Virus record (IMG/VR): IMGVR_UViG_3300043410_001892
Span: 308,174-372,173 of that record
Length of the DNA: 64,000 nucleotides
Strand: one strand, 5' to 3'
The notes beneath the pieces are model-generated. The model was given only the letters and a program-made list of their open reading frames with translations. It did no database searches and was not told the origin of the DNA. The position numbers and the translations under genes were made by a program. Shown in pieces: positions 43,857-61,264 of this stretch (positions are counted from its first letter, which is position 1; each line of letters starts with the position of its first letter).

Positions 43857-44108
43857 ATGAAATTCGAAATAGCTCCTATTGATACACATATACTATGTGG
43901 TTCTTATGAAGAAGCCAAGATGTATCTAATGTTTTTAGAAGTCAACGGCAAACGAAAATGGAGACTTCCTACTCGATACGAACACTGTAAATATTTTGTT
44001 GCAGGAGTTAATCTAAATTATAATGATCATATATGGGATCAACGAGATGACAATACTATTCTGTTAAATGGTAACAAACGCCGTGTAATCCCAGTGAGAG
44101 ATTTATGA
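43857..44108 (+). CDS. Mini DUF1566/Lcl-like array A gene 1
   Basis: YEEA..Y...L..NG...WRLPT..E...VIPVRD. Confidence 0.75.
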   Translation: MKFEIAPIDTHILCGSYEEAKMYLMFLEVNGKRKWRLPTRYEHCKYFVAGVNLNYNDHIWDQRDDNTILLNGNKRRVIPVRDL

Positions 44109-44341
44109 CAGAAGTTTCAGATAAGAGTGTATGGTGTAATGAAATATCGTTAGATGATGCTCGATTATATCTGTTATTCTTAAATCATCGAGGACATAAA
44201 GATTGGCGATTTCCTACAGCATTAGAACGAATGATGCTTCCAGAGTTTTCAAAAACAGGAGGGTATTGGTATTCATTTGACCTTGATAGCACTAACATGG
44301 CATCTAAAAAATATACGCTAGTTCCAGTTCGAGATTGCTAA
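44105..44341 (+). CDS. Array A gene 2
   Basis: GHKDWRFPT...LVPVRD. Confidence 0.75.
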   Translation: MTEVSDKSVWCNEISLDDARLYLLFLNHRGHKDWRFPTALERMMLPEFSKTGGYWYSFDLDSTNMASKKYTLVPVRDC

Positions 44342-44349
44342 ATAATAGT

Positions 44350-44607
44350 ATGAAAATAGAAGAATTACTAACAGAACTTACGTTTAAGGGCTCGCAATGC
44401 ACTAAAGACTGCAGTGGTCACGAAGCAGGATTTAATCACCAAGTAAGAAAAGGTACTTCAAGTGACTCATATAGTCCTCATAGTCCTAGTTTTAATAAGG
44501 GTGCAGCTATTGCAAGGGCAGATCGAACTGTAACTAGAGCTCCTCAGCCTCGCGACAAAGGTAGATTTGCTGCTAGACCAAAGCCAAGAACTAAGAAATC
44601 TAAATAG
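44350..44607 (+). CDS. Hypothetical protein with capsid-targeting-like N-terminus
   Basis: MKIEELLTE; CT.DCSGH.AG...SF..G; CTAAATA upstream. Confidence 0.7.
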   Translation: MKIEELLTELTFKGSQCTKDCSGHEAGFNHQVRKGTSSDSYSPHSPSFNKGAAIARADRTVTRAPQPRDKGRFAARPKPRTKKSK

Positions 44608-44769
44608 GCCCCGCTGTGCAAGTGTGTGATATACTTATATATATGCGCATGCTTGCACGTTCAAAAAAATTTCAATTTAATCAAGTCGTATACATTGACA
44701 ATGCACACATATATGTGTATTATAACAGTTTTTAACATAGACCCCGCTGTACACATATAGGAGAAAACA

Positions 44770-44973
44770 ATGGCAGACGATTTTGAATCAAGAGTACAAT
44801 TGTCATCAGGTTGTTTGATGTACGTTCGTACACAGCACGATGATGATCGATTAGTAGTGTTTGCATTTAAGCACGATGAGTTTAGATGTGATTTCCAAAT
44901 ATTTTATGACGATTGTAGTGACGAATTTAAAAGCTGGGTAGAACAGCCAGTTATCACTGCTGCTTCGTTTTAG
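44770..44973 (+). CDS. Hypothetical protein
   Basis: AGGAG RBS, own promoter; flanked by motif copies. Confidence 0.7.
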   Translation: MADDFESRVQLSSGCLMYVRTQHDDDRLVVFAFKHDEFRCDFQIFYDDCSDEFKSWVEQPVITAASF

Positions 44974-45007
44974 GCCCCGCTGTACACATAATTGGTAAAA
45001 TCAATAA

Positions 45008-45048
45008 TTGACATTTGAGTTTAGTTACTGTATAGTATACGGTAACTA
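45008..45048 (+). promoter_or_regulatory. sigma70 promoter with overlapping palindrome
   Basis: TTGACA-17-TATAGT; TAGTTACTGTATA-G-TATACGGTAACTA inverted repeat at 45022-45048. Confidence 0.75.
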
Positions 45049-45410
45049 CAGAAGGTGTCGCGCAAACCACATAGTAACTGCGCCCTATAACTGGACAACT
45101 GTATCACAGTGAAGGAATTGTTGAGCTGTAGCAACGACATAACCACCTACCCATTTGGATGAACATGAGATGTACCTTTACAAAACTCATTACAGGTTAT
45201 GGCCCCGCTGTACACATAAGGTTAAAAGAAGGAGTAGCACTCCTACGATTGTATATGCAGTTAGCATTGTGTATACAGTCCGCCGTCATATTTACCAGGA
45301 CGGAGCTCGAGGTACCGGATGACCGCCTCTGTAATGCTCTAATGCTAAGACATGAAAAACTCAACAAATGTTCGCCATTGGCCTTTACGGGCCAATGTGA
45401 CTTCTTAATC
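45043..45410 (+). ncRNA. Candidate large structured non-coding RNA
   Basis: Follows a strong promoter with no credible ORF; at least 8 stems and a potential 8-bp pseudoknot (see findings). Confidence 0.6.
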
Positions 45411-45533
45411 TAACAAAATATTCAAAGAAATAAAAATTCAAATTAAAATAATGAATATGAGCGAATGCGAATTTGAATTATTTTAATTTGTTTGTGAGCT
45501 GTAAGCTCGCAATTTTACTATTAGTGAGGAAAT

Positions 45534-45767
45534 ATGATTGAAATATCTGACAAAACTGCATGCAGGAAATTAGGATACAATGAAGCATGGCTGTATTGCT
45601 TAACTTTAAACCATAATGGACATAAAGATTGGCGTATGCCAGCTCAGTTTGATCATTATCAAGGTAACGACTGGCCAACTTCAACTTGGGTTGAAGTAAG
45701 TAACCCAAATAGTATTATAGATATCACTGATACTTTTGGAATAGTCCCAGTAAGAACTATTGATTAA
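45534..45767 (+). CDS. Array A gene 3
   Basis: YNEAWLYCLTL..NGHKDWRMP...IVPVR. Confidence 0.8.
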   Translation: MIEISDKTACRKLGYNEAWLYCLTLNHNGHKDWRMPAQFDHYQGNDWPTSTWVEVSNPNSIIDITDTFGIVPVRTID

Positions 45768-45833
45768 ATTATCATTTGTAAATTCTAAAAATTTATATTA
45801 CAATAATGTTTTTTAATAATCATGAGGTGCAAC

Positions 45834-46190
45834 ATGGCAAAAAAAGTTAAGTATAAATCAGCCGAAGATAAACGCCGTGCATTAGAAGCTGAAAAACAAT
45901 GGAAAGAAATGACTAAGACATATGGTCTTAGTGATAAGCCGGCTAATACAAAATCACTTAGAACAATCTCACAGAAAAAAACATTAAGTAATGTTGCACC
46001 AACATATAGAGGTAGTGATAGTAAACCTCCCAGTTTAGTTACAACTACTAAAGGTGGCGGCAGCAAAGTTACAGCTCCAAGATATACCGGTACTTTGATT
46101 AAAGGTATCGCAACGATGCATAAATCAAATGCCGTGCCAATTATTGACCAAGAGCAAGCAACTGAGATTTCACGGATGCGTAGAGGATGA
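45834..46190 (+). CDS. Conserved hypothetical phage protein
   Basis: YTGT.IKGIATMHKSNAVP......A.EIS.MRR. Confidence 0.75.
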   Translation: MAKKVKYKSAEDKRRALEAEKQWKEMTKTYGLSDKPANTKSLRTISQKKTLSNVAPTYRGSDSKPPSLVTTTKGGGSKVTAPRYTGTLIKGIATMHKSNAVPIIDQEQATEISRMRRG

Positions 46191-46399
46191 CAGAATTTGC
46201 CCCAATGGTCTTCCATCAGCTAACATATAACGATGCATGGATGTACTGTGTTACATTAGAATACGATGGACATAAGGATTGGCGTTTGCCTACTTTTTTA
46301 GAATGGTGTAATAGAAATGATTTACTTGGTTGGTATGAAAACGCGACGGTGCAAGCCGCAACATCAGTGCGAGCTGTTTGCCCAGTGAGGGATATATGA
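46187..46399 (+). CDS. Array A gene 4
   Basis: AWMYCVTLEYDGHKDWRLPT...VCPVRDI. Confidence 0.8.
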   Translation: MTEFAPMVFHQLTYNDAWMYCVTLEYDGHKDWRLPTFLEWCNRNDLLGWYENATVQAATSVRAVCPVRDI

Positions 46400-46608
46400 T
46401 AGAATTTGCCGCAATGGTCTTCCATCAGCTAACATATAGCGAGGCATGGATGTACTGTGTTACATTAGAATACGATGGACATAAGGATTGGCGCCTGCCA
46501 ACCCTTAACGAATGGAGTAATAGTAGTGAATTACTCGGTTGGTATGAAAACGCGTCGCCGGTTTTCACCCATTCTAAGCGAGCTGTTTGCCCAGTGAGGG
46601 ATATATGA
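46396..46608 (+). CDS. Array A gene 5 (recent duplicate of gene 4)
   Basis: Near-identical DNA to 46187..46399. Confidence 0.8.
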   Translation: MIEFAAMVFHQLTYSEAWMYCVTLEYDGHKDWRLPTLNEWSNSSELLGWYENASPVFTHSKRAVCPVRDI

Positions 46609-46865
46609 TAGAATTTGGTCCATTATCTAGTACAAAATTTTTGTATCGAGATGCATGGCTATATTGTCACACCTTTAATTATAATGGACATAAGGATTGG
46701 CGTATGATAACAAAAGCAGATGCATTCGTATTAGCGTTGGACGGTATAACCATCTATTCTGGTACTTGGATTGATAAAACTGTTCCTGATCACATGTTAA
46801 GTAATAATATATTTGGCGACTTTACACGAGCCCATGTAATACCAGTGAGGGATAAAAATGATTGA
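46605..46865 (+). CDS. Array A gene 6
   Basis: AWLYC..F.YNGHKDWRM...VIPVRD. Confidence 0.8.
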   Translation: MIEFGPLSSTKFLYRDAWLYCHTFNYNGHKDWRMITKADAFVLALDGITIYSGTWIDKTVPDHMLSNNIFGDFTRAHVIPVRDKND

Positions 46866-47079
46866 TTTTGCAGAACTACCAGATTATAGGTTTACTTATA
46901 ATGAAGCATTTCTTTATTGTATAACACTAAGTTACAATGGTCATAAAGACTGGAGAATGCCAACACACGACGAATATATGAATTGCAAAGAGATTGCTAG
47001 TGAATCGTTTGATGACAGTGATGACCCTAAAGATATTAAAGCTAAATATCCCATTGTACCAGTCCGTGATGTGAACTAA
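46858..47079 (+). CDS. Array A gene 7
   Basis: AFLYCITLSYNGHKDWRMPT...IVPVRD. Confidence 0.8.
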   Translation: MIDFAELPDYRFTYNEAFLYCITLSYNGHKDWRMPTHDEYMNCKEIASESFDDSDDPKDIKAKYPIVPVRDVN

Positions 47080-47221
47080 TAACTACTTGCAAATTCTAAT
47101 ATAATTTGTTATAATTATTTTTTAAACTAAATGCGAGGTTATATGATTGATTTATTTTTAACTCTAAGTTTAATTGTAGTAATGCTATATTTGATGAATA
47201 AAGTTAGTGAGATTATCGAAC

Positions 47222-47470
47222 ATGATAGAATTTAGTACGCTATCTGATCAGATGGTTGACAGAGAAACTGCCATCATGTTAGAGTTTATGTGCTGTCACA
47301 ACAATAAAAAAGGTTGGAGATTTCCAACCGATCGAGAATACATCACTCGTAAAGAAATCCCATATGGAGTTTGGTCTAAAGGGTTAGTTGATCGTAATGA
47401 TAAAAAATCAAGATTATGCTTTTTTGTGAGAGATATAAATGACGAAAACATGGAAAGTAGCAGTAGGTGA
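47222..47470 (+). CDS. Array A gene 8
   Basis: MIEF...KKGWRFPT..E...FVRD. Confidence 0.7.
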   Translation: MIEFSTLSDQMVDRETAIMLEFMCCHNNKKGWRFPTDREYITRKEIPYGVWSKGLVDRNDKKSRLCFFVRDINDENMESSSR

Positions 47471-47741
47471 TTACGTAGTAGAAGTTGCTGATTATCCACG
47501 TAACTATATGTCGTATGATGAAGCAGCTATGCACTGTTTGTTTTTGAAAATCAATAAAGCAGCTGGTTGGCGAATACCAACTGCAGCTGAATATAACAAA
47601 ATTGATGGCATCACTTGTATAATTGATAGATATCGTGATAGTGGGCTATCAGCACCATTTGATCAACGTGATTTTGAGTCAGCAATACGTCGACCATTAT
47701 TACCAGTTAGAACTATCAAAGACCCCGCTGTACACACGTAG
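47439..47741 (+). CDS. Array A gene 9
   Basis: YDEA.MHC..L....GWRIPT..E...LPVR. Confidence 0.75.
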   Translation: MTKTWKVAVGDYVVEVADYPRNYMSYDEAAMHCLFLKINKAAGWRIPTAAEYNKIDGITCIIDRYRDSGLSAPFDQRDFESAIRRPLLPVRTIKDPAVHT

Positions 47742-48314: not shown

Positions 48315-49394
48315 ATGACACTCGAAGCAACTGCTATTTCAATTCTTGAAGGCGAAGAAGTAAGTCCAATTGATAAAAAAGATGCAATGGAACTTATCGA
48401 ACACTTACAAGCATGGCTGCCAAATTATCCACAAGGTTCAAATAAGTTTATTTCTTATCTACATAAGAATTTAACTCCAATTCACGCAGTCTACGGTTTA
48501 TACTCTGCAGTTGACAATGGTAGTTTAGAAATTACACATCGTAATCTCCAAACTATGATGTTGTTTGAAAAAGATCTTGGTTACTTAGTCAAACATTTAG
48601 AAAATCCAGAGAAGAAGATAAACTTCTTCAATGCTATGCTTAAAGGTACTGATATTTCGTATGTCGAGCTGGAACTAACTAGTCCGTTTATGATTCAACC
48701 AGAAGAAGAGATTGGCACTGGTACATACGAACAAACTGTTGCGATTGAAGATTTATTTGCTAATACTGAAGAAGAAGATACTACAACAGCAGCTTCGACG
48801 ACCTCAGCGCCAAGTGTATCAACTGCAACTAAATCGTCTACTAATAAAATATCAGAACCATTTAAAGATATTTTAGATACTGCTGCTAAAAAAGTACTTG
48901 GCGTAGGAGTTAAGAAGACTGATGCTGAAAAAGATCAAGAACAAGATGATCATGATGCATACTATGTATATACGCAGTATTTGTATCAGTTTACCCCGGA
49001 TGAAGACTGTGATCTTGCTATCTCAGTAGTATCGCAAAAGTTTTGGGATGACAACGGATATCTTGATGATCAACACATCTCGGAGTATTTAGAAGCGATT
49101 ATTCCAGACTGGTCCGATAACTGGTGTGAAACTATGGAAAGTGTATTTGAATACACTGGTGGTTCAACTAAGGCAGAAGCTATTGCTTATTTAAAAGCAA
49201 CTGGGTTCTTTAAAGAAGAAGAACTATTTGATGTTGAATTTAGTAAAGCAGATATCTTACTAGGTTATCTTGAAGGCCAACCTGAAGAAATAATTTCTAA
49301 GTTTCTCAAAGAGGCACTTACACATCTTGATGAAAGCCAAATTGAAGACTTAATTCAAAAGTATGAAGACGCTTGGCACGAAGAGGATGATTGA
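48315..49394 (+). CDS. Acidic hypothetical protein
   Basis: 359 aa, AAGGAG RBS. Confidence 0.75.
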   Translation: MTLEATAISILEGEEVSPIDKKDAMELIEHLQAWLPNYPQGSNKFISYLHKNLTPIHAVYGLYSAVDNGSLEITHRNLQTMMLFEKDLGYLVKHLENPEKKINFFNAMLKGTDISYVELELTSPFMIQPEEEIGTGTYEQTVAIEDLFANTEEEDTTTAASTTSAPSVSTATKSSTNKISEPFKDILDTAAKKVLGVGVKKTDAEKDQEQDDHDAYYVYTQYLYQFTPDEDCDLAISVVSQKFWDDNGYLDDQHISEYLEAIIPDWSDNWCETMESVFEYTGGSTKAEAIAYLKATGFFKEEELFDVEFSKADILLGYLEGQPEEIISKFLKEALTHLDESQIEDLIQKYEDAWHEEDD

Positions 49395-49608
49395 TATACA
49401 CGATCTAGGCATATCAACTGATTACACCACTGCATGGTTGATATGCCTAACCATGGAACACAACGGACATAAAGATTGGCGATTGCCAACATGGTATGAC
49501 TATATAAATAGTGCAGAACTACATGACTGCTGGTATGAAGATGATTTTTACACCGTATACATAGGAAAGAACGTATTTGCAGTTCGTAGCAAAGAGGCCC
49601 CACTGTAA
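49387..49608 (+). CDS. Array A gene 10
   Basis: AWLICLT..HNGHKDWRLPT...AVR. Confidence 0.75.
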   Translation: MIDIHDLGISTDYTTAWLICLTMEHNGHKDWRLPTWYDYINSAELHDCWYEDDFYTVYIGKNVFAVRSKEAPL

Positions 49609-49826
49609 TGGAAAAAATAGAAATTGCTCAAACTACTCGAAAATCCTTAACTTATGCTGAAGCACAGATGTATTGTTTTGTGTATGAAGAGAATAATATT
49701 CGTGGTTGGAGATTACCAACTGAAGATGAGTATGTAAACCACAATGAAATATGGGGTTGGGTTCAAGATGATGAACGTCAAGACGAGTACGGTACCTTGA
49801 GAGTTACTCCAGTGAGAGATTTATGA
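49608..49826 (+). CDS. Array A gene 11
   Basis: YAEAQMYC......GWRLPT..E...VTPVRD. Confidence 0.8.
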   Translation: MEKIEIAQTTRKSLTYAEAQMYCFVYEENNIRGWRLPTEDEYVNHNEIWGWVQDDERQDEYGTLRVTPVRDL

Positions 49827-50056
49827 TTGAGTTTGCCCCTCAATCACCAACCAATATGTCATTTGATGAAGCATTTCTCTATTGTTTAACACTTAACTAC
49901 AAAGGACATAAGGATTGGTCTATACCTTATAGACGAGAGAAACGCTCATACATGATAGGTACTTGGTCTATTGATGATATAAAACTGATAGAGTTTTACT
50001 ATTCATCTGATACAAAGACATCTGTATTTCCTATTAGAGGTTATTATGAATCATGA
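49823..50056 (+). CDS. Array A gene 12
   Basis: AFLYCLTLNYKGHKDW..P...PIRG. Confidence 0.8.
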   Translation: MIEFAPQSPTNMSFDEAFLYCLTLNYKGHKDWSIPYRREKRSYMIGTWSIDDIKLIEFYYSSDTKTSVFPIRGYYES

Positions 50057-50273
50057 ATACGGTATAAGATCGCCCGATCGCTTAACTTTTGACGAAGCAT
50101 TTCTGTATTGCCTTACACATAATTTTAATGGACATAAAGATTGGTATATGCCAACTTTTACTATGTGGGTATTTGATGATGTTATTACTGGCTGGCATAG
50201 TTCAGCTAAACTGCAACGTGATATTAGTTATGACATATCACGAGTTATACCAGTGAGAGATATAGATGATTGA
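50046..50273 (+). CDS. Array A gene 13
   Basis: AFLYCLT..FNGHKDW.MPT...VIPVRDIDD. Confidence 0.8.
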   Translation: MNHEYGIRSPDRLTFDEAFLYCLTHNFNGHKDWYMPTFTMWVFDDVITGWHSSAKLQRDISYDISRVIPVRDIDD

Positions 50274-50481
50274 AATTGCATATAAAACTATAAAAGACAT
50301 GGATTACGATACTGCATGGCTTTATTGTTTGGTATATGAGAAAGACGGGCATAAAGATTGGCGATTGCCTAGTCGTGACGAATACTTTAATACTGACGGA
50401 ATACATCTACATACTTGGTTTGAAAACAGAGAAGATGACACTAAATGGTGTTGCCAACCAGTGAGAGGTATAGATGATTGA
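50266..50481 (+). CDS. Array A gene 14
   Basis: AWLYCL....DGHKDWRLPS...QPVRGIDD. Confidence 0.8.
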   Translation: MIEIAYKTIKDMDYDTAWLYCLVYEKDGHKDWRLPSRDEYFNTDGIHLHTWFENREDDTKWCCQPVRGIDD

Positions 50482-50686
50482 ATTTGCTATACGATCTCAA
50501 GAAGAAATGGTTTACGACCAAGCATTTCTGTATTGTCTAACACTCGAGTATAATGGACATAAAGATTGGCGATTGCCTACAGGAATTGAATATTCTATTA
50601 CGGATGCGCTATCATTTTGCTGGTTTGAAGAAAGAAAAACCGGCGAAAGATGGGTATGTCAACCAGTGAGAGATATAGATGATTGA
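50474..50686 (+). CDS. Array A gene 15
   Basis: AFLYCLTLEYNGHKDWRLPT...QPVRDIDD. Confidence 0.8.
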   Translation: MIEFAIRSQEEMVYDQAFLYCLTLEYNGHKDWRLPTGIEYSITDALSFCWFEERKTGERWVCQPVRDIDD

Positions 50687-50891
50687 AAAAGGACCAGCAG
50701 CTGGAAAAAAACTTCATTATAGAGAAGCGTGGATGTATTGTCTTACACTCTCTTATAACGGACACAAAGATTGGCGTATGCCAAGTTACTTTGAAACTAA
50801 TTACGGGTGGAATGAACGAGATGTAATGAACCCTAATTTAGAATCGCCCTATCAATATTCAATTATACCAGTGAGAGATATAGATGATTGA
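50679..50891 (+). CDS. Array A gene 16
   Basis: AWMYCLTLSYNGHKDWRMPS...IPVRDIDD. Confidence 0.8.
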   Translation: MIEKGPAAGKKLHYREAWMYCLTLSYNGHKDWRMPSYFETNYGWNERDVMNPNLESPYQYSIIPVRDIDD

Positions 50892-51090
50892 ATACGCCCC
50901 ACCAACAACAGAATGTGTAGACTATGACACTGCTTGGCTGTATTGCGTTACCCTAGCACACGATAACAAATACGACTGGCGAATGCCAACACATAAAGAA
51001 TATGAGACTTCTCCATTTATATTAGGTTGGTTTGTAGATAGACCACAGACTGAAAATCTCTGGACTTGCCAACCAGTGCGTGATTGTTAA
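50884..51090 (+). CDS. Array A gene 17
   Basis: AWLYCVTL....YDWRMPT...QPVRD. Confidence 0.8.
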   Translation: MIEYAPPTTECVDYDTAWLYCVTLAHDNKYDWRMPTHKEYETSPFILGWFVDRPQTENLWTCQPVRDC

Positions 51091-51157
51091 ACCATTTGCA
51101 ATTTTAAATTTATACTGTTATAATATATTTTTATTTACACACCCCGCGGGAGTATAT

Positions 51158-51451
51158 ATGTCTAACGAACTTATTGAAAAATTAGCACAAGACCCAGGTT
51201 CTCATTCAGCTTACATTGAGGATTCAGAATTACGAGAAATGGCAATTGTATGGGCAGTTGTAATTCGTAATGAAACCCGACCAGATCATTATTCAGAGTA
51301 TGTAAAACGAATAGATGAGATGAAGAAAAATGAGCCATTGTTGTATAGACGATTTGCTGACTATCTAGTCGATACTGTTGAAAACGGTACACATAGCGCA
51401 GCTTGGAGTGCACCAGCAGACCGTATTCGTAGAACATTACTACCTAAGTGA
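51158..51451 (+). CDS. Hypothetical protein
   Basis: Start MSNELIEK, GGGAG RBS, early promoter at 51097. Confidence 0.65.
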   Translation: MSNELIEKLAQDPGSHSAYIEDSELREMAIVWAVVIRNETRPDHYSEYVKRIDEMKKNEPLLYRRFADYLVDTVENGTHSAAWSAPADRIRRTLLPK

Positions 51452-51458
51452 GGTAAGC

Positions 51459-51662
51459 ATGGCAATTGAACACGCGCCACGTTCTGAACATAAGATGAGT
51501 TACGAACAAGCAGAGATATACGCATTTATGTGTAACCATGACGGTAAGCGCGGTTGGCGCTTACCGACCTTTAACGAGTTTGTGGATCCTAATACATGGT
51601 ATAAAGATGCTGAGATTACTAAAAGAAAGTGGTTTGTTGCACCAGTGAGGGATATAAAATGA
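51459..51662 (+). CDS. Array A gene 18
   Basis: YEQA..YA....DGKRGWRLPT..E...APVRDIK. Confidence 0.75.
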   Translation: MAIEHAPRSEHKMSYEQAEIYAFMCNHDGKRGWRLPTFNEFVDPNTWYKDAEITKRKWFVAPVRDIK

Positions 51663-51991
51663 ACTTTGAGATATCACCAAAAACGATGGAGATACACGCT
51701 ACGTGGGATCAAGCAGTTATTTACTGTTTTGGTTTAGGAGATGGTTGGCGATTACCAACGTTGGCGGAATTACAAGAAATAACCACAATCTCTAAAAATT
51801 CCCTTAATCCTACAACAAGCGTACTAACACATGTCCCATATCATGATATGGCAAATAAATGGCATTGGTCGTCTGACGAATATGAGTATAATAACAATAA
51901 AGTCTTGTGTTTCAATTATTGGACCAATACAATGTGGGACTGCGATAAAAACAACTGTTATATTATTAGACCAGTGAGGGATATAAAATGA
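51659..51991 (+). CDS. Array A gene 19, near full-length DUF1566 domain
   Basis: TW.QA..YC..LG.GWRLPT..EL...WSS.E...IRPVRD. Confidence 0.85.
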   Translation: MNFEISPKTMEIHATWDQAVIYCFGLGDGWRLPTLAELQEITTISKNSLNPTTSVLTHVPYHDMANKWHWSSDEYEYNNNKVLCFNYWTNTMWDCDKNNCYIIRPVRDIK

Positions 51992-52194
51992 AAGCTAAAG
52001 AACTAATTAAATTATTATCACAACATCCTAACGCTGATGTGGTTATAAGTGACTATAATGGTTGGGAAACACCATTTTATGATGTCGATGCTATTGAATT
52101 CCATGAAAATAGTTATCCTGTTGGTGAAAATATTAGAAAAAGTGCCAAGCCTAATAATGGTTTGGTTACTTTCACATTGGGTAAGAGACATTAA
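51988..52194 (+). CDS. Hypothetical protein (unrelated gene within array)
   Basis: MK.KELI..L...P.ADV. Confidence 0.65.
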   Translation: MKAKELIKLLSQHPNADVVISDYNGWETPFYDVDAIEFHENSYPVGENIRKSAKPNNGLVTFTLGKRH

Positions 52195-52195
52195 A

Positions 52196-52591
52196 ATGAT
52201 TGAATATGCACCAATCGCTATTACCAAACAACACTATGACAACAGATCCTCAGTTTATTCGGATAAATTGTTTGTGGTATGGATGCCAGATAATACCAGA
52301 AGAAAAACAATCGAACTAGCCATTAAATCAGTAAGTTTATCTTGGGCTAATTTAGCACATGATGATTTGTCAGAGTTAGATTTATCAGGTCTAGATCTTT
52401 CTTATGCTGATTTATCGTTTGCAAATTTGTCAAATGCTAATCTAACCAATACGAATTTATTTCAAGCAAGTTTACGTGGAGCAGATCTTACAGGTGCATT
52501 ACTTGACAATACCAACCTACAATATGTGGATCTGTCCTATGCAACTTTAGATCATACCAACTTACACAACTGCAACTTCCATAAATTATGA
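52196..52591 (+). CDS. Pentapeptide-repeat protein with array-A-type N-terminus
   Basis: MIEYAP start, then A(D/N)LS/T pentapeptide repeats. Confidence 0.8.
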   Translation: MIEYAPIAITKQHYDNRSSVYSDKLFVVWMPDNTRRKTIELAIKSVSLSWANLAHDDLSELDLSGLDLSYADLSFANLSNANLTNTNLFQASLRGADLTGALLDNTNLQYVDLSYATLDHTNLHNCNFHKL

Positions 52592-52902
52592 ATATTGAAC
52601 TAGCCCCTTACAAATATTGGCTGATTGACACTAATTTTGACACAGCTAAAATGCACTGCTTTTTTCTTAACATTGACAATAAGCTTGGTTGGCGTTTACC
52701 AACTAATCAAGAAGCCTGTGATCTTGTTAATTTTGTTGAATCGTTAGATACTGATTTCCCAAAAGAATTACAAGAGTTTTCAGAGTATTGGTTTGATGAC
52801 GAGAGTTATGGTTTTTGGACTTTTGAAGATGAAGATCTTCATTCAAATGCAGATTTAGGCGAATTATTTACAGTAATCCCCGTGAGAGATAAAGATGCTT
52901 GA
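52588..52902 (+). CDS. Array A gene 20
   Basis: FDTA.MHC..L....GWRLPT..E...VIPVRD. Confidence 0.8.
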   Translation: MNIELAPYKYWLIDTNFDTAKMHCFFLNIDNKLGWRLPTNQEACDLVNFVESLDTDFPKELQEFSEYWFDDESYGFWTFEDEDLHSNADLGELFTVIPVRDKDA

Positions 52903-53104
52903 ACATGCACCAAGAATAGAAAAAGATATGTGTTATGATACCGCATGGCTTCACTGCCTAACACTTAACTATAATGGCCATAAAGATTGGCGATTACCAA
53001 CTCAAAGAGAATATGATAAATCTAGTATAACAATAAGTTGGTTTGAAGATAGATTACCAACACCATTACAATGGTACTGTCAACCTGTACGCGATATAAT
53101 ATAA
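52895..53104 (+). CDS. Array A gene 21
   Basis: AWLHCLTLNYNGHKDWRLPT...QPVRD. Confidence 0.8.
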   Translation: MLEHAPRIEKDMCYDTAWLHCLTLNYNGHKDWRLPTQREYDKSSITISWFEDRLPTPLQWYCQPVRDII

Positions 53105-54009: not shown

Positions 54010-54283
54010 AGTCAATGTTGTAGCTAAGGATTCTAAACCTAAAAAACCAGTAATCAAAAAACGTTTGGTTCAGGTTGATAATCATCGCATTCGAATCGCT
54101 GAAACTGATTTGCCACATAAAGGTAATGTTGACCTGCATGATCCTAAGATTAAAGAACGCGGACCTAATCAAGAATTGGTAGTGTATGCTACTGCCAAAG
54201 AAGATACTTACGAACCTGGGAGAGAATACGTCTGTTACTTTACTCTTAAAGGTAAACTTGAAGGTTACTTCACAGTCAATTAG
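53993..54283 (+). CDS. Hypothetical protein
   Basis: Start MSTSIKV. Confidence 0.6.
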   Translation: MSTSIKVNVVAKDSKPKKPVIKKRLVQVDNHRIRIAETDLPHKGNVDLHDPKIKERGPNQELVVYATAKEDTYEPGREYVCYFTLKGKLEGYFTVN

Positions 54284-54291
54284 AAGGCACA

Positions 54292-54696: not shown

Positions 54697-54875
54697 GTGG
54701 ATTAGGATATATTGCAGCTGAACTTGAACAGTGTTGTGAACTCTGTGGCAAAATTGAAGAATGTCGTCCGTATGGTCCTAATGGTGAACAAATCTGTTTT
54801 GACTGTGGTATGAAAGATGAAGAAACTACTAAACAACAGATGGCAAAGTATATCTTTGGAGTAGACAGTGATTAA
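54693..54875 (+). CDS. Small Zn-finger protein
   Basis: CELCG...ECRPYG..GE.IC.DC. Confidence 0.7.
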   Translation: MSGLGYIAAELEQCCELCGKIEECRPYGPNGEQICFDCGMKDEETTKQQMAKYIFGVDSD

Positions 54876-55107
54876 AGATAATCCGTTGCTCGATTATGCT
54901 CCACCGTTAAATAAACCTGTAGATGAAGATACCGCATTCATGTATTGTATAACACTAAGTTACAATGGTTATAAAGACTGGAGATTCCCAACAAGACCTG
55001 AATTTGGAGATACGGGTGATGTATGGTTTGACGGTGAGAACTTTTCTAATGCATCTGGCTATTGGAGATGGCGAGTTCAACCAGTAAGATCTAAAGAGGA
55101 TATATGA
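54868..55107 (+). CDS. Array A gene 22
   Basis: AFMYCITLSYNGYKDWRFPT...QPVR. Confidence 0.8.
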   Translation: MIKDNPLLDYAPPLNKPVDEDTAFMYCITLSYNGYKDWRFPTRPEFGDTGDVWFDGENFSNASGYWRWRVQPVRSKEDI

Positions 55108-56233: not shown

Positions 56234-56270
56234 TTGCAATCCAGCTTACACTTTGCTATAATATATTTTT
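56234..56270 (+). promoter_or_regulatory. Early sigma70-like promoter (identical copy at 60672)
   Basis: TTGCAA-17-TATAAT with extended TG; related promoters near 43804, 44695, 45776, 47088, 48023, 51097, 53107, 55990, 59879, 62635. Confidence 0.8.
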
Positions 56271-56732: not shown

Positions 56733-56981
56733 ATGGCAGTTAAAGTTACAACAAACCAAACAGAGTCTGTTGAAAAAAATAAGTATCCAATACTTGGAAT
56801 TTTTCCAGATGGTACTATTATTTTGTTTTCTTCTATAAATGAAGGCACTATCTTGAAATCAGAATCAAAACAAAGTATAGGTCAGTATAGTTCAAATCGG
56901 CCCGATTATCGCCATTTTGGTCCGGACTATAACTGGGTTCCGTATACTGGAACTATTACATTATCTAATGAGGAGCTATGA
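56733..56981 (+). CDS. Hypothetical protein
   Basis: GAGGAG RBS; YP......I.LF....GT....IG...Y.G.ITLSN. Confidence 0.7.
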   Translation: MAVKVTTNQTESVEKNKYPILGIFPDGTIILFSSINEGTILKSESKQSIGQYSSNRPDYRHFGPDYNWVPYTGTITLSNEEL

Positions 56982-57038
56982 GGGATTTAATAAATGTGGG
57001 ATAAGCCATACGTCGTTACCGCGTAACTTTCATTACAC

Positions 57039-57069
57039 AAGGTGCTTTGGTAACAGAGCACCTTTTTTT
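57039..57069 (+). terminator. Rho-independent terminator
   Basis: AAGGTGCTTTG-GTAA-CAGAGCACCTT followed by T run. Confidence 0.8.
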
Positions 57070-57079
57070 ATGAGATTAT

Positions 57080-57274
57080 ATGATAGAATTTTCATTTGAC
57101 GAACAAAATGGTGTTATTCATCGTACTAATGGTCCAGCTTGGATAAATCCAGGATATGGACATACTCCACTTGGATACTATTGGCATTGGCGGCTATTTG
57201 GCGTTAGACATCGTTATTATGGACCGCAAAATCGGGATGGTGATTGGTGGTTACATGGGAAGAGAGTAAAATGA
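57080..57274 (+). CDS. Array B gene 1 (HRxNGPA/HRYYGP)
   Basis: HRTNGPA...W.LFG.RHRYYGP...W.LHGKRVK. Confidence 0.8.
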   Translation: MIEFSFDEQNGVIHRTNGPAWINPGYGHTPLGYYWHWRLFGVRHRYYGPQNRDGDWWLHGKRVK

Positions 57275-57474
57275 TTGAAATACGAAACACTGCTAACAAT
57301 GGATTTGTATATCTTTTAGATGGTAATTGGCATCGATCTAATGGCCCTGCTAGGGTATGGGCAAATGGAGAATGGGGATGGTATTTAACTGATCGCCAAC
57401 ATCGCTATTATGGTCCGCAAGCAAACAATGAGTGGTGGATACATGGGGAGTGTATAAAATATGGATTCGACTAA
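57271..57474 (+). CDS. Array B gene 2
   Basis: HRSNGPA...HRYYGP. Confidence 0.8.
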   Translation: MIEIRNTANNGFVYLLDGNWHRSNGPARVWANGEWGWYLTDRQHRYYGPQANNEWWIHGECIKYGFD

Positions 57475-57682
57475 GTCACAACGATATTTATACAGTTATT
57501 TAACACCTAATGATACAGTTGAGTACAAATTGCATACTGGTGGGTTTCATCGATGTGATGGACCTGCACTAACACGATATGAAAGATGGGCATGGTTTTT
57601 ATATGATCAACATCATCGGTATTATGGTCCGCAGCACTCACATTATCCTAATTGGATGATTCATGGGAAGAGGGTTAAATGA
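57461..57682 (+). CDS. Array B gene 3
   Basis: HRCDGPA...HRYYGP. Confidence 0.8.
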   Translation: MDSTKSQRYLYSYLTPNDTVEYKLHTGGFHRCDGPALTRYERWAWFLYDQHHRYYGPQHSHYPNWMIHGKRVK

Positions 57683-57879
57683 TTAAACAAACTAAAAACG
57701 ATCATAGTATTAGGTTTACTAAAGATGGTAAGTTGCATTGTGCAAATGGTCCAACAGTATCATGGAATGATGGTTCATGGTCCTGGTATTTAGATGGCTA
57801 TCCTCATCGTTATTATGGACCACAAAAATCTTATGTGTTATATCGTAACTGGTATATTCACGGGATTGAAATTAAATGA
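57679..57879 (+). CDS. Array B gene 4
   Basis: HCANGP...HRYYGP. Confidence 0.8.
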   Translation: MIKQTKNDHSIRFTKDGKLHCANGPTVSWNDGSWSWYLDGYPHRYYGPQKSYVLYRNWYIHGIEIK

Positions 57880-58076
57880 TTATAAGAATTGAAGAAGAAC
57901 ATAGTATATGCTATCGATTAGAAAATGGTGTGTGCCATCGACCTAATGGACCTGCTGTAGAGTTTAAGGCTGACAAGACAGGCTATTGGTTCTTGTTTGG
58001 TAAACGACATAGATACTATGGTCCGGCATCTCATGCTAATAATTGGTTTTGGATACATGACAAGAGAGTTAAATGA
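57876..58076 (+). CDS. Array B gene 5
   Basis: HRPNGPA...HRYYGP. Confidence 0.8.
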   Translation: MIIRIEEEHSICYRLENGVCHRPNGPAVEFKADKTGYWFLFGKRHRYYGPASHANNWFWIHDKRVK

Positions 58077-58267
58077 TTACAAAAACTAAGGAAGGCAGTA
58101 TTGTTGTATACCGATTAAATGACATGTGGCATCGATCTAGTGGTCCTGCTTATGAGTTTCCTAATGGTAAAGGCTTTTGGGCATTATTTGGTAAACGACA
58201 TAGATACTATGGTCCGGCATCTCCCTATAGTAACATATATTATCTACATGACAGGTTGGTTAAATGA
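58073..58267 (+). CDS. Array B gene 6
   Basis: HRSSGPA...HRYYGP. Confidence 0.8.
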   Translation: MITKTKEGSIVVYRLNDMWHRSSGPAYEFPNGKGFWALFGKRHRYYGPASPYSNIYYLHDRLVK

Positions 58268-58491
58268 TAGAAAGATTTGAAGACATTGAATGTGTTCGTT
58301 ACCGATTAAATGGTGTGCCTCATCGAACTAATGGACCTGCGTTTGAATGGCTAAATGGTGACTGGAGTTGGGCATTGCATGGGAAAATACATCGTTATTA
58401 CGGACTTGCAGGTAGCAATGCAATGATAGATATTTTTCATGAATCGCGCAAAATAAAGTTTTGGGTATTGCACGGTGAGAGAGTTAGATGA
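58264..58491 (+). CDS. Array B gene 7
   Basis: HRTNGPA...HRYYG. Confidence 0.8.
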   Translation: MIERFEDIECVRYRLNGVPHRTNGPAFEWLNGDWSWALHGKIHRYYGLAGSNAMIDIFHESRKIKFWVLHGERVR

Positions 58492-58712
58492 TTGATCGAA
58501 TTGAGGAAAACGATCGTGTTTGTTATCGATTAAATGGGGTGCCTCACCGTCCTAATGGACCTGCGTTTGAATGGCCAAATGGTGACTGGAGTTGGTCGTT
58601 GTATGGGAAAATACATCGCTATTACGGACCTGCGGCTTGCAATGAAACGATAGATAAGTATCATGGCGGCAATTCAAAGTTTTGGGTATTGCACGGTGAG
58701 GGAGTTAGATGA
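58488..58712 (+). CDS. Array B gene 8 (recent duplicate of gene 7)
   Basis: HRPNGPA...HRYYGP. Confidence 0.8.
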   Translation: MIDRIEENDRVCYRLNGVPHRPNGPAFEWPNGDWSWSLYGKIHRYYGPAACNETIDKYHGGNSKFWVLHGEGVR

Positions 58713-58948
58713 TTGAAGAAAGACAGTGTGTAGCATCAGTTGTTGGTACATACACAGAATATGTAAAAGACAATAAACCTCATCGACCCAATGGCCCGGC
58801 AAGGATCTATAATGATGGTGATGCTTACTGGTGGTTATATGGGAATAGACATAGATACTATGGACCTCAAACATCTAACCAAGAACGATCAATTTGGCGA
58901 GTACACGACCGGGAAATGAAATATGAAGTCCACTGGATTGAAGAATAA
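58709..58948 (+). CDS. Array B gene 9
   Basis: HRPNGPA...HRYYGP. Confidence 0.8.
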   Translation: MIEERQCVASVVGTYTEYVKDNKPHRPNGPARIYNDGDAYWWLYGNRHRYYGPQTSNQERSIWRVHDREMKYEVHWIEE

Positions 58949-59117
58949 TAAGTATTATGAGCATCGAGAAGATGACAAGTTACACTGCACTAATGGTCCG
59001 GCATGTGCTGCCGGACCAAACAGTTGGTTATGGTGTTTAAATGATCAACCTCATAGATATTACGGTCCTTACCATTCTGACGGATGTTGGTGTCTTCACG
59101 GGAAAAGAGTTAAATGA
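58923..59117 (+). CDS. Array B gene 10
   Basis: HCTNGPA...HRYYGP. Confidence 0.8.
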   Translation: MKSTGLKNNKYYEHREDDKLHCTNGPACAAGPNSWLWCLNDQPHRYYGPYHSDGCWCLHGKRVK

Positions 59118-59323
59118 CTAAGCCACACCGATATGTAAGCACTTATTGTGAAACTGATGATACAGTTATTTATAGAGTGCTCAATGATTATCATCGATGT
59201 GATGGACCTGCACTAATACAATATGACAAATGGGGATGGTTTTTGTTTAACAACTGGCACAGGTATTATGGAGAGGCTCGTAGTGCCGGTGATTGGTATA
59301 TTCACGGGAAATTAGTTAAATGA
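59114..59323 (+). CDS. Array B gene 11
   Basis: HRCDGPA...HRYYG. Confidence 0.8.
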   Translation: MTKPHRYVSTYCETDDTVIYRVLNDYHRCDGPALIQYDKWGWFLFNNWHRYYGEARSAGDWYIHGKLVK

Positions 59324-59511
59324 TAAAAAAAACAGATGGCGGATATTATTATGAATATCGATCAAATGGTAAGAGACATCAAGTCAATGGTCCTGCGTTA
59401 GTCTTTGTTACTGGTGAAAAATATTGGTTTTTATATGATCAATGGCATAGATATTATGGCTATCAATCTAACAAGAATCAATGGTGGTTACATGGGGAAA
59501 AAATTAAATGA
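59320..59511 (+). CDS. Array B gene 12
   Basis: HQVNGPA...HRYYG. Confidence 0.8.
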   Translation: MIKKTDGGYYYEYRSNGKRHQVNGPALVFVTGEKYWFLYDQWHRYYGYQSNKNQWWLHGEKIK

Positions 59512-59720
59512 TTGAACAATTTGAGTACCATAGTTGCACAGTATATTTAAAGGACGGCGAACCGCATCGTCCTAATGGACCAGCAAGGATATACCGTGAT
59601 GGATCTAAGTATTGGTGGTTATATGGGATTCGCCATCGATACTATGGACCACAATGTAAGGATATTTATGGAACAATTTGGAGAATACATGGCTTACTGA
59701 TAAAACATGAACACAAATAA
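59508..59720 (+). CDS. Array B gene 13
   Basis: HRPNGPA...HRYYGP. Confidence 0.8.
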   Translation: MIEQFEYHSCTVYLKDGEPHRPNGPARIYRDGSKYWWLYGIRHRYYGPQCKDIYGTIWRIHGLLIKHEHK

Positions 59721-59871
59721 CGATCTAACACATAAGACTAATGGCCCCGCTGTAACGTGTAGCAACGGTTATTGGTCATGGAGATTATTTAACAATTATC
59801 ACAGGTATTACGGTCCGGTAAATAGTAGAGGACGATGGTGTATTCATAACAAGTGGGTTAAATGGTTGTAA
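59707..59871 (+). CDS. Array B gene 14 (54 aa, not in track)
   Basis: MNTNNDLTHKTNGPAV...HRYYGP...WCIHNKWVKWL. Confidence 0.7.
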   Translation: MNTNNDLTHKTNGPAVTCSNGYWSWRLFNNYHRYYGPVNSRGRWCIHNKWVKWL

Positions 59872-59931
59872 AAATCATTGTACATTTCTGTGATAATATG
59901 CTATAATATATTTTTTTACTTGCAAAATTAT

Positions 59932-60195
59932 ATGCCTAAATTAAAAAAACAAAAAGGGTTTTGGTATGCCCCTAAACCATATAAAGGAGTAATTGCTTTG
60001 AGAGATTTAATAAACATTGTCGAAGACAAAGAATGCCAGACACCTGGCGCAAATTATAGATTTGAAACAACTGATGATAGCGTAACATCAACTGTTACAT
60101 TACCATTCAAACTTAACTTAACAGAAGAACAGGTTAAGAAACTTGAAAACGAATTACACGATTCATTAGAACAAGTATTTAAACAATTTTTCTAG
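59932..60195 (+). CDS. Hypothetical protein
   Basis: Start MPKLKKQ after early promoter. Confidence 0.55.
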   Translation: MPKLKKQKGFWYAPKPYKGVIALRDLINIVEDKECQTPGANYRFETTDDSVTSTVTLPFKLNLTEEQVKKLENELHDSLEQVFKQFF

Positions 60196-60206
60196 GATAA
60201 CACACA

Positions 60207-60278
60207 ATGATACCTGGACCGCCTGCACCAAACACAATAAACTGGTTTTGTGTTAGACCAGTGAGGGATATTAAATGA
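60207..60278 (+). pseudogene. Vestigial array A member (23 aa)
   Basis: MIPGPPAPNTINWFCVRPVRDIK; keeps the CCAGTGAGGGATATTAAATGA junction. Confidence 0.6.
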
Positions 60279-61263: not shown

Positions 61264-61264
61264 T

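What the first reader, a model, noticed from the sequence alone, without database searches (positions are those of the whole stretch)
44092..60278. Self-chaining gene design: each gene's last codons encode the RBS and start of the next
Seen: internal array A members end in CCAGTGAG(A/G)GATATA(G/A)ATGA(TTGAA). This is a 25-bp identical junction at 50250, 50663 and 50868, with one mismatch at 50458. Their Arg codon is AGA/AGG, giving a GAGG/GAGAG SD about 7 nt before the overlapping ATG. Several run-terminal members (44323, 47059, 51073, 53083) encode the same PVRD with CGN codons and no SD. The junction also precedes unrelated genes (51988, 60275) and survives out of frame at the end of an unrelated gene (GTAAGAGACATTAAAATGATTGAA, ~52181). 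Array B uses CA(T/C)GG..AGAG(T)TAAATGAT in the same way. Inference: junctions act both as translational couplers and as microhomology for cassette-like insertion, excision and duplication, so any new cassette is expressed at once.
Basis: partly seen in the sequence, partly recalled or inferred. Interest (0 to 1): 0.8.

Follow-up and report, generated by a model that had tools for sequence, protein, structure and literature searches.

The report
Coupled mini-gene chains in jumbo phage
A 372-kb freshwater jumbo phage carries about a hundred tiny paralogous genes strung into operons, each gene's last codons holding the ribosome-binding site and start codon of the next; related phages show genes lost, gained and swapped mostly at these junctions, a translational version of known phage module shuffling.

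Summary
The window is the end of a complete 372,173-bp jumbo myophage from a freshwater metagenome. Genome-wide it has 46 family A genes (about 70 aa, minimal Lcl_C/DUF1566 domains) and 56 family B genes (about 65 aa, MORN_2/DUF6745-like). They form runs that start at sigma70-type promoters and are chained by 4-11 nt stop/start overlaps.

In coupled A genes the Pro-Val-Arg codons are strongly biased towards a Shine-Dalgarno sequence: GTG 21/26 against 6% background, and AGG 11/28 against 3%. Run-terminal genes use background codons and TAA stops. ATGA overlaps are common across the whole genome (120, of which 68 lie outside both families).

Related phages support the cassette idea in part:
- 9 of 11 clean in-run indels have both ends within about 25 nt of a start codon.
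- A close strain lacks exactly two genes, cut junction to junction.
- A gene 94.5% identical to a free-standing gene of another jumbo phage sits exactly between two junctions.
- One A unit lies in non-syntenic arrays in two genomes.

About half of the gene-precise events have 4 nt of homology or less. Promoter-bounded and intragenic events also occur. Selection for intact coupling is therefore as good an explanation as microhomology targeting. I rate this a new variant of a known kind (compare PeSLs and boundary sequences).

The parts
43857..44341 (+). Run of two family A genes (43857-44108 and 44105-44341) with an ATGA overlap. The second is run-terminal (CGA, TAA).
45534..47741 (+). Family A region II. 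It holds A gene 45534-45767; non-A gene 45834-46190 coupled to A genes 46187, 46396, 46605 and 46858 (the last ends at 47079 with CGT and TAA); promoter 47087-47115; and A genes 47222-47470 and 47439-47741.
49363..51090 (+). Run of eight family A genes, chained by overlaps of 1 to 11 nt. The last one is run-terminal (CGT, TAA).
50250..50892 (+). Four consecutive junctions: the 25-mer at 50250, 50458 (one mismatch), 50663 and 50868. Each encodes PVRDIDD-stop of one gene and Met-Ile-Glu of the next.
50474..50686 (+). Single A unit whose ortholog (85.5% nt identity) lies in a non-syntenic array of relative G001. Identity is about 90% from the ATG to the PVR codons and falls in the junction tails and in the neighbouring genes.
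51096..51132 (+). Sigma70-type promoter with a TG-extended -10, 6 nt after the TAA of the preceding run. Sister copies are at 47087, 53107, 55990, 56234, 59879 and 60672.
   Evidence: (family D11)
51158..53104 (+). Mixed run: non-A gene 51158-51451; A 51459-51662; A-long 51659-51991; foreign gene X 51988-52194; pentapeptide-repeat gene 52196-52591; A-long 52588-52902; A 52895-53104 (terminal; CGC, TAA).
51642..51662 (+). Junction that is the left breakpoint of the 537-nt indel seen against strain X4 (window 51654 joined to 52192).
   Evidence: record 17
52181..52210 (+). Relic junction. The out-of-frame VRDIK codons lie inside the 3' end of gene X, followed by ATGATTGAATATGCA, the A-type first five codons now heading the pentapeptide gene. 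It is the right breakpoint of the X4 indel and the point where homology to the donor-like gene in L054 ends.
54868..55107 (+). Solitary family A gene, coupled by ATGA to unrelated gene 55104-55448.
57039..57064 (+). Intrinsic-terminator-like hairpin with a T run, just upstream of the B array.
57080..59871 (+). Array of 14 family B genes, mostly chained by ...AAATGA overlaps. The Shine-Dalgarno sequence lies in the His-Gly-x codons.
60207..60278 (+). 23-codon fusion ORF that ends in an intact A-type junction (PVRDIK-stop/ATG) coupled to gene 60275-60664. It is the product of a 504-nt deletion relative to contig L053.

Best explanation
What it is. The region is part of the hyperplastic accessory zone of a complete 372-kb freshwater jumbo myophage. 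The zone runs from about genome 352 kb, across the contig ends, to about 44 kb. It is built of short operons. Each starts at a strong host-type promoter placed a few bases after the previous run's TAA stop. Each holds up to about a dozen (in the largest B array more) tiny genes of two paralogous families, with occasional unrelated genes mixed in.
- Family A: minimal Lcl_C/DUF1566 domains.
- Family B: MORN_2/DUF6745-like repeat proteins.

How the genes are expressed. Within a run, genes are joined by stop/start overlaps (mostly ATGA, also 8- and 11-nt overlaps). The Shine-Dalgarno sequence of each downstream gene is written into the conserved C-terminal codons of the upstream gene: Pro-Val-Arg as CCA GTG AGR in A, and His-Gly-x in B. 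Ribosomes finishing one gene can therefore re-initiate on the next (translational coupling; inferred from sequence, not measured).

How the arrays change. The same 10-40 nt of junction recurs at every unit border. It is the longest near-identical stretch between otherwise 40%-identical paralogs. It is therefore both the place where short-homology recombination or replication slippage is most likely and the only place where a breakpoint leaves all genes intact and expressed. The outcome is birth-and-death arrays in which whole genes, and occasionally foreign genes, are deleted, duplicated, moved or inserted junction to junction. The events are shown by comparison of genomes. The relative weight of mutational bias and selection is inferred.
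For: Genome and families.
- One complete contig with direct terminal repeats.
- 46 A and 56 B genes, all but one on the + strand, in one zone.
- A matches Lcl_C by Pfam (38.7 bits for the long form) and by Atlas structure (TM about 0.8).
- B resembles DUF6745/MORN_2.

Coupling.
- Codon bias and TGA stops are seen only in coupled members.
- Anti-SD duplex energies are -5.1 against -1.4 for A (p 1.5e-5), -4.5 against -2.65 for B (p 0.036), and -0.8 for the background.
- There are 120 ATGA overlaps genome-wide.
- Promoters with TG-extended -10 elements sit directly after run-terminal TAA stops.

Recombination at junctions.
- Strain X4 joins 51654 to 52192, removing exactly two genes and recreating a canonical junction.
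- In the census of G001, G002, L047 and L049, nine clean in-run indels end within about 25 nt of start codons. Four are flanked by junction repeats of about 10-15 nt (one with a mismatch). Binomial p is about 8e-6.
- Gene X is 94.5% identical to a free-standing gene of an unrelated 306-kb phage contig. The homology starts 4 nt before the ATG and ends where the relic junction begins.
- The pentapeptide gene carries only the A-type first five codons.
- Unit 50474 is orthologous to a unit in a non-syntenic G001 array, with borders at the ATG and at the PVR codons.
- A 4-gene B block shared with L053 starts 3 nt before an ATG and ends 2 nt after a stop.
- Orthologous junctions are no better conserved than gene bodies (identity about 0.95 throughout). 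The four identical 25-mers therefore point to local homogenisation rather than extreme constraint.

Array turnover. Sister genomes G001 and G002 have 46 and 42 A genes but no B gene, and different numbers of A genes between conserved anchor genes.

Recombinase. A RecA/UvsX-like recombinase is encoded in the genome.
Against: - No expression or ribosome data exist. The host is unknown, and the canonical anti-SD was assumed.
- The indel census is small and was classified by hand. The pairs compared share ancestry.
- Five of the ten junction-located events (nine from the census plus X4) have 4 nt of homology or less, which does not look homology-driven.
- Five other events are bounded by promoters or by the GGCCCCGCTGTA motif.
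- At least three breakpoints lie inside genes: G001 339648-339825, the 504-nt deletion behind 60207-60278, and G002 54003-55048.
- One shared B segment (window 57209-57423) runs from mid-gene to mid-gene.
- In our genome adjacent A junctions are only weakly more alike than non-adjacent ones (0.48 against 0.37, p 0.11).
- The public runs are held as contigs, so within-population heterogeneity and circles could not be seen.
Confidence: 0.7

Rival explanations
1. Selection filter only. Breakpoints arise at random by illegitimate recombination. Only products that keep every gene intact and translationally coupled survive, so mosaic borders appear at gene borders. The junction plays no mutational role.
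For: - Five gene-precise events have 0-4 nt of homology: ATG-to-ATG or SD-spacer-to-SD-spacer cuts, including the non-A gene G001 329157-329458.
- Intragenic events that survive are in frame and keep coupling.
- This is the standard view for mycobacteriophage mosaics (PMC3029335).
Against: - Five events are flanked by junction repeats of 8-15 exact nt or about 10 nt with one mismatch (up to about 40 nt at 93%). That is far more than the roughly 0.3 nt expected at random joints.
- These accessory genes appear dispensable, since they differ between close strains. Selection against gene-breaking deletions should therefore be weak.
- Junction tails follow the local array rather than the unit.
Confidence: 0.3
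2. Plain tandem duplication and divergence. The arrays are old tandem duplicates. Junction identity reflects only protein, Shine-Dalgarno and dual-coding constraint. No cassette exchange takes place.
For: - Recent tandem duplicates exist: 46187/46396 at 89% nt, and 58264/58488.
- The codon bias shows real selection on the Shine-Dalgarno sequence.
Against: - Foreign gene X lies inside the chain.
- One unit lies in non-syntenic arrays.
- Family B is absent from sister genomes but present in 69 copies in a co-occurring phage contig.
- Orthologous junctions are not more conserved than gene bodies.
Confidence: 0.08
3. Recoding. The overlaps are sites of programmed frameshifting or read-through, so that consecutive units are made as multi-domain repeat proteins.
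For: - B units look like 2.5 MORN-type repeats cut by the junction.
- Cellular Lcl_C and MORN_2 proteins are multi-domain.
Against: - No slippery heptamer or downstream structure recurs at junctions.
- Overlap lengths vary (1, 4, 8 and 11 nt).
- A Shine-Dalgarno sequence followed by ATG with SD-directed codon bias argues for re-initiation.
Confidence: 0.03
4. Site-specific cassette system of the integron type, with the junction acting as an att site.
For: The genes form an array of promoterless cassettes behind a common promoter. Some changes involve exactly one unit.
Against: - No tyrosine integrase is encoded in the genome.
- No recurrent inverted repeats lie at unit borders.
- Breakpoints scatter over about 40 nt.
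Confidence: 0.02

Closest known systems
Translational coupling through overlapping stop/start codons (AUGA type), with the Shine-Dalgarno sequence inside the upstream ORF. Examples from my own knowledge: the trp operon and many T4 genes. Surveys of 4-nt overlaps: PMC2716372 and PMC3887535 (listed; titles and abstracts only).
   Same: ATGA overlap, a Shine-Dalgarno sequence 3-8 nt upstream, and codon choice at the 3' end of the upstream gene bent towards that sequence.
   Different: Here one junction type is repeated about 75 times between paralogs. Because the Shine-Dalgarno sequence lies in a conserved protein motif, coupled and uncoupled paralogs give an internal control.
PeSLs (promoter-early stem-loops) that mediate modular shuffling in the hyperplastic regions of T4-type phages (Arbiol et al. 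2010, PMC2839356; PMC4122927).
   Same: - Short conserved expression signals flank small non-essential genes.
- Indels between close phages are bounded by them.
- Inserted genes are expressed at once.
- Promoter-to-promoter events also occur in this clade (L047 2199-4188; G001 343257-343679).
   Different: - PeSLs are intergenic, about 100 bp, and transcriptional (promoter plus terminator).
- The junctions here are 10-40 nt, lie inside coding sequence, and act in translation.
- Mini-circles were not tested.
Boundary (linker) sequence model of phage module exchange, and its rival of illegitimate recombination plus selection (as summarised in PMC3029335).
   Same: Short conserved sequences at gene borders are proposed as sites of homologous exchange. 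The same unresolved debate between mutation bias and selection applies here.
   Different: Here the conserved sequence has a clear separate function (SD, start codon and protein termini) and recurs in tandem.
Poxvirus genomic accordions, and birth-and-death evolution of tandem paralog arrays (from my own knowledge).
   Same: Lineage-specific expansion and contraction of tandem gene copies in a large dsDNA virus.
   Different: Units here are about 210 nt and translationally chained. No link to a selective pressure is known.
Integron gene-cassette arrays.
   Same: Promoterless cassettes are read from a common upstream promoter.
   Different: No integrase and no attC. Expression of each unit relies on coupling, not on its own or Pc-proximal signals.

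Membership tests
Translationally coupled overlapping genes | Stop codon of the upstream gene overlaps or abuts the start codon of the downstream gene on the same strand. | tested here: met
   30 of 45 A genes and 46 of 56 B genes have an ATG from 30 nt before to 3 nt after the first base of the stop codon that opens an ORF of at least 40 codons. The ATGA overlap is the commonest arrangement.
Translationally coupled overlapping genes | Shine-Dalgarno sequence for the downstream gene lies inside the upstream ORF and is under selection. | tested here: met
   Codon bias (GTG 81% against 6%; AGG 39% against 3%) appears only in coupled members. Duplex energy is -5.1 against -1.4 kcal/mol.
Translationally coupled overlapping genes | Downstream translation depends on translation of the upstream gene. 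| not testable with these tools
   Needs a reporter assay or ribosome profiling. No RNA run holds the phage.
PeSL-type mobile regulatory cassettes | Composite of a strong sigma70-like promoter and a stem-loop terminator, repeated in hyperplastic regions. | tested here: inconclusive
   Conserved promoters are present at run starts. Terminator-like hairpins were seen at only a few sites (45492, 57039).
PeSL-type mobile regulatory cassettes | Indels between close phages are bounded by the repeated element. | tested here: met
   Met for promoters in three events (L047 2199-4188; G001 343257-343679; G002 67757-68005). Met for translational junctions in ten events.
PeSL-type mobile regulatory cassettes | Excised mini-circles. 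| not testable with these tools
   The public runs are held as contigs only.
Integron cassette array | IntI-type tyrosine recombinase. | tested here: not met
   PF00589 finds nothing in the complete genome, while all 14 control genomes gave a match.
Integron cassette array | attC-like imperfect inverted repeat at each cassette border. | tested here: not met
   No recurrent inverted repeats at unit borders in 49300-53200 or 57000-60000.
Lcl_C / DUF1566 (PF07603), family A | Match to the Pfam model above its gathering score. | tested here: inconclusive
   The long form 51659-51991 scores 38.7 bits against a cutoff of 34.9. The 70-aa forms score 16-22 bits and cover only the first half of the model. 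Atlas structure matches to Lcl_C clusters give TM 0.8-0.85 by query.
MORN_2 / DUF6745, family B | Match to the Pfam model above its gathering score. | tested here: not met
   The two window members tested have no Pfam hit. Some longer homologs reach DUF6745 at 17-28 bits (cutoff 27). Atlas similarity to MORN_2 clusters is a lead only.

The most novel reading that the evidence does not exclude
The junctions form a true, recombinase-independent cassette system. A translational-coupling element embedded in coding sequence doubles as the preferred crossover site, possibly with the help of the phage's UvsX/RecA-like enzyme. Promoterless single genes, including foreign ones, could then be excised, moved between arrays and between co-infecting jumbo phages, and be translated at once. 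This would be the translational counterpart of PeSL shuffling and would drive the rapid turnover of anti-host gene repertoires.
Probability: 0.3. Interest if true: 0.7.

Novelty: new variant of a known kind. Interest (0 to 1): 0.5.

Why it matters
Jumbo phages carry large blocks of tiny genes of unknown function that differ between close relatives, and how these blocks turn over is poorly understood.

This case gives an unusually clean natural experiment on two points.

1. The same protein motif is encoded with Shine-Dalgarno-forming codons only where a gene follows. That quantifies selection for coupling inside coding sequence.
2. Related genomes show whole-gene deletions, a unit moved between arrays and a freshly acquired foreign gene, all with borders at the coupling junction.

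If junctions really bias recombination, translational signals would join promoters and terminators (PeSLs) as vehicles of modular evolution. Operon architecture itself would then help explain how phages try out new genes without having to evolve new expression signals.

The junctions could also serve as compact, portable coupling elements for synthetic operons.

Tried and rejected
- The INPHARED phage collection gave no match by DNA or protein.
- A single B protein and the 14-row B alignment could not seed a viral-contig scan. A 6-row alignment found only the same phage.
- An HMM search of G001 and G002 for family B found nothing. I read this as true absence.
- Boundaries of tandem duplicates within the genome (for example 46187/46396) cannot locate a breakpoint, because a tandem repeat can be rotated. 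This test was dropped.
- My first reading of 60207-60278 as an internally deleted A gene was wrong, as was my reading of the pentapeptide gene as carrying about 22 A-derived residues. Both were corrected by comparison with L053 and L058.
- My first reading of a 9-nt repeat flanking the 6.5-kb block 56981-63527 was replaced. The relic at 56978-57004 matches the start of the gene that follows the B array in L053.
- An ungapped comparison of adjacent and non-adjacent junctions gave only a weak signal in our genome.
- Several low-depth or short-sided joints (49872 to 52869, 50776 to 51116, 50266 to 52901) were treated as paralog matches or as too weak to use.
- The literature search for jumbo-phage paralog arrays returned nothing useful.

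Full report
CONTEXT

The window is the last 64 kb of a single 372,173-bp contig (GC 35.5%) from a freshwater metagenome, JGI sample 3300043410. IMG/VR classes it as complete with direct terminal repeats. It encodes ribonucleotide reductase, collagen-like tail fibres and a baseplate hub, so it is a jumbo myovirus-type phage. Nothing similar is in the GenBank phage collection.

THE OBSERVATION

The 25-nt junction is identical at 50250, 50663 and 50868 and has one mismatch at 50458. The degenerate 20-mer occurs 9 times in the window against 0.02 expected.

HMMs built from window members find 46 family A and 56 family B genes in the genome. All but one are on the + strand. They lie at 2-44 kb and 352-368 kb, which is one accessory zone running across the contig ends.
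- Family A (about 70 aa; WRLPT...PVRD) is a minimal Lcl_C/DUF1566 domain. The long form passes the Pfam cutoff, and Atlas structure matches to Lcl_C clusters give TM about 0.8.
- Family B (about 65 aa; HRxNGPA...HRYYGP...WxHG) has no Pfam hit for the two members tested. It has 172 small viral or metagenomic homologs and resembles DUF6745 and MORN_2 repeats.

CODON TEST FOR COUPLING

Background usage in 91 long ORFs is Val GTG 6%, Arg AGG 3%, AGA 43%, CGN 54% and Gly GGG 6%.

In A genes whose stop is overlapped by a downstream start:
- the PVR motif uses GTG in 21/26 and AGG in 11/28 (AGR in 25/28);
- the stop is TGA in 24/29.

In A genes with no overlapping successor the figures are GTG 2/14, AGG 0/12, CGN 7/12 and TGA 1/14. 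Terminal genes thus sit at background. They are relaxed rather than avoiding a Shine-Dalgarno sequence.

Predicted pairing with the canonical anti-SD is -5.1 kcal/mol upstream of coupled A starts, -1.4 for terminal members and -0.8 for random genome sites. For B it is -4.5 against -2.65, with GGG in 12/29 coupled His-Gly motifs.

ATGA overlaps are a habit of the whole genome: 120 have ORFs of at least 40 codons on both sides, and 68 of these lie between genes of neither family.

Each run begins at a conserved promoter (TTGCAA, 17 nt, TG-extended TATAAT, then ATATTTTT). It lies 3-8 nt after the preceding TAA, at 47087, 51096, 53107, 55990, 56234, 59879 and 60672. 'Run-terminal' therefore means 'last gene of an operon'.

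All this fits translational coupling of the long-known AUGA type. It is inferred from sequence and was not measured.

RELATIVES

IMG/VR and JGI contigs give the following relatives:
- an identical copy of the phage (L001);
- a complete sister genome, G001 (372,016 bp; anchor genes 70-90% nt identical);
- an 88.6-kb fragment, G002 (88-97% identical to G001);
- two further contigs of that clade, L047 and L049.

Anchor genes and promoters are conserved, but the arrays between them differ in number and are mostly not one-to-one orthologs. G001 and G002 have 46 and 42 A genes and no B gene at all.

A 39-kb contig of another phage in the same sample (L053) has 69 B genes in 20 kb, with the same ...AAATGA junction. 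It also shares 95-96% identical blocks with our phage.

I aligned G001, G002, L047 and L049 pairwise. I kept gaps of at least 40 nt (at least 30 nt in the first four segments) with at least 80% identity in the flanks.

Nine unique in-run events have both ends within about 25 nt of a start codon or, at a run's end, at the stop codon or promoter:
- Four one-gene A indels. Three are flanked by junction repeats of 15, 11 and 10 exact nt (up to about 40 nt at 93%). The fourth is cut between the Shine-Dalgarno sequence and the ATG.
- Five events with at most 4 nt of homology: three ATG-to-ATG events, one cut from a start codon to the next promoter, and one SD-spacer-to-SD-spacer deletion of a non-A gene.

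Outgroups show that at least two of the nine are deletions.

Two in-run events are intragenic or unclear. Five events are bounded by promoters or by a GGCCCCGCTGTA motif. If breakpoints were uniform, about 18% would fall in the junction zone. Nine of 11 gives p about 8e-6 (hand-classified, small sample).

EVIDENCE FROM THE WINDOW ITSELF

Contigs of public runs from other waters hold close strains.
- In run X4 a 701-nt contig (16 mismatches) joins 51654 directly to 52192. This removes exactly the A-long gene and gene X and recreates a canonical junction that couples A 51459 to the pentapeptide gene. The two junctions share only TAAAATGA, so an assembly chimera is unlikely.
- In run X5 the anchors around the 49363-51090 array are about 90% identical, but the array itself is 490 nt shorter and cannot be aligned apart from one junction 29-mer.

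Gene X (51988-52194) has only three homologs. One is a free-standing gene, with 185- and 72-nt spacers, on a 306-kb contig of an otherwise unrelated jumbo phage. Nucleotide identity is 94.5%, starts 4 nt before the ATG, and stops exactly where the relic junction begins. X is therefore a recent acquisition sitting precisely between two junctions.

The pentapeptide gene's nearest homolog is also free-standing and differs only in the first five codons. In our phage those five codons are the A-type ATGATTGAATATGCA.

Unit 50474-50686 is 85.5% identical to a G001 unit in a non-syntenic array. Identity is about 90% from the ATG to the PVR codons but drops in the tails (DIDD here, TIND there) and in the neighbours.

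A four-gene B block shared with L053 starts 3 nt before an ATG and ends 2 nt after a stop.

CONSTRAINT OR HOMOGENISATION?

Across 22 orthologous coupled junctions of G001 and G002, identity is flat at about 0.95 from -90 to +90 nt. Junctions are not detectably better conserved than gene bodies. Tails after PVR vary widely across the family.

Four identical 25-mers in a row, between genes only 45-57% identical, therefore suggest local homogenisation or exchange of gene bodies between fixed junctions, rather than extreme constraint.

The general signal is modest. Adjacent junctions are more alike than non-adjacent ones in G001 (0.55 against 0.39, p 8e-5) and in our B arrays (p 0.03), but not significantly in our A arrays (p 0.11).

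COUNTER-EVIDENCE

- The mini-ORF 60207-60278 arose by a 504-nt deletion between CCTGC(G/A)CCA repeats inside two genes.
- G002 carries a 178-nt internal deletion of an A gene.
- One shared B segment runs from mid-gene to mid-gene.

These products are in frame and keep the downstream junction, which is what a selection filter would leave behind.

There is no tyrosine integrase and no attC-like repeat, so this is not an integron. A RecA/UvsX-like recombinase is encoded in the genome.

VERDICT

The sequence pattern is confirmed and highly non-random. Its first meaning, translational coupling with the Shine-Dalgarno sequence written into a conserved C-terminal motif, is well supported and of a known kind.

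Its second meaning, junctions as the seams at which genes are lost, moved and acquired, is supported by several independent natural events. Whether the junction attracts recombination or merely survives it is not settled.

The nearest described system is PeSL-mediated shuffling in T4-type phages (PMC2839356) and the older boundary-sequence model (PMC3029335). The difference is that the repeated element here is translational and lies inside coding sequence.

Noticed in passing
window 44609, 44742, 44975, 45203, 47723, 53164, 59745 (16 sites genome-wide): The motif (G)GCCCCGCTGT(ACACA) occurs 16 times, only on the + strand and mostly in the accessory zone. In about half of the copies it lies about 15-30 nt upstream of a Shine-Dalgarno sequence and start codon. 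It may be a phage-specific promoter or RNA-processing site. In G001 the same motif flanks two indels of about 930 nt.
   Followed up: partly
window 56234-56270 and 60672-60708: Two promoter copies are identical over 37 nt although 4.4 kb apart. The promoter family has at least six members in the window.
   Followed up: partly
genome-wide; G001, G002 and L053: Family B (56 copies here, 69 in 20 kb of the co-occurring contig L053) is completely absent from the sister genomes G001 and G002. Those genomes have a 24-gene A array where ours has B genes. Total genome size is nearly the same (372,016 against 372,173 bp).
   Followed up: partly
window 56978-57004: An 8-codon relic ORF (MRDLINVG-stop) is coupled by ATGA to gene 56733-56981. 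It matches the start of the gene that follows the B array in L053, and residues inside gene 59932-60195. This suggests the B array was inserted into the 5' end of that gene. The whole block 56981-63527 is absent from G001.
   Followed up: partly
window 41040-41774: An ORF just upstream of the arrays has weak precomputed hits to SegE-type GIY-YIG homing endonuclease and NUMOD3. It might contribute to local recombination.
   Followed up: no
window 57673: The identical IMG/VR contig from another data set (171,592 bp) ends here, inside the B array. This probably reflects assembly trouble in the repeats.
   Followed up: no
genome 371945-372173 and 2-345; L054 10271-10761: Two small genes next to gene X in the 306-kb phage contig are 91-96% identical to genes at our contig ends. 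In our genome X itself lies 12 kb away, so there has been recent exchange of several small genes between otherwise unrelated jumbo phages.
   Followed up: no
window 47222-47470: This A gene has lost its normal TGA. The junction-like sequence GTGAGAGATATAAATGA is read through for 10 more codons, giving a 32-nt overlap with the next A gene (47439).
   Followed up: no
G001 350081 versus G002 74008: Where a coupled downstream gene is present, the upstream gene ends with AAGGAG. In the genome that lacks that gene the same codons read AAGAAG. This is a second, independent hint that Shine-Dalgarno-forming codons track the presence of a successor gene.
   Followed up: no
window 7795-11056 and 27313-29610: Several large collagen-like-repeat tail-fibre genes lie on the minus strand.
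   Followed up: no
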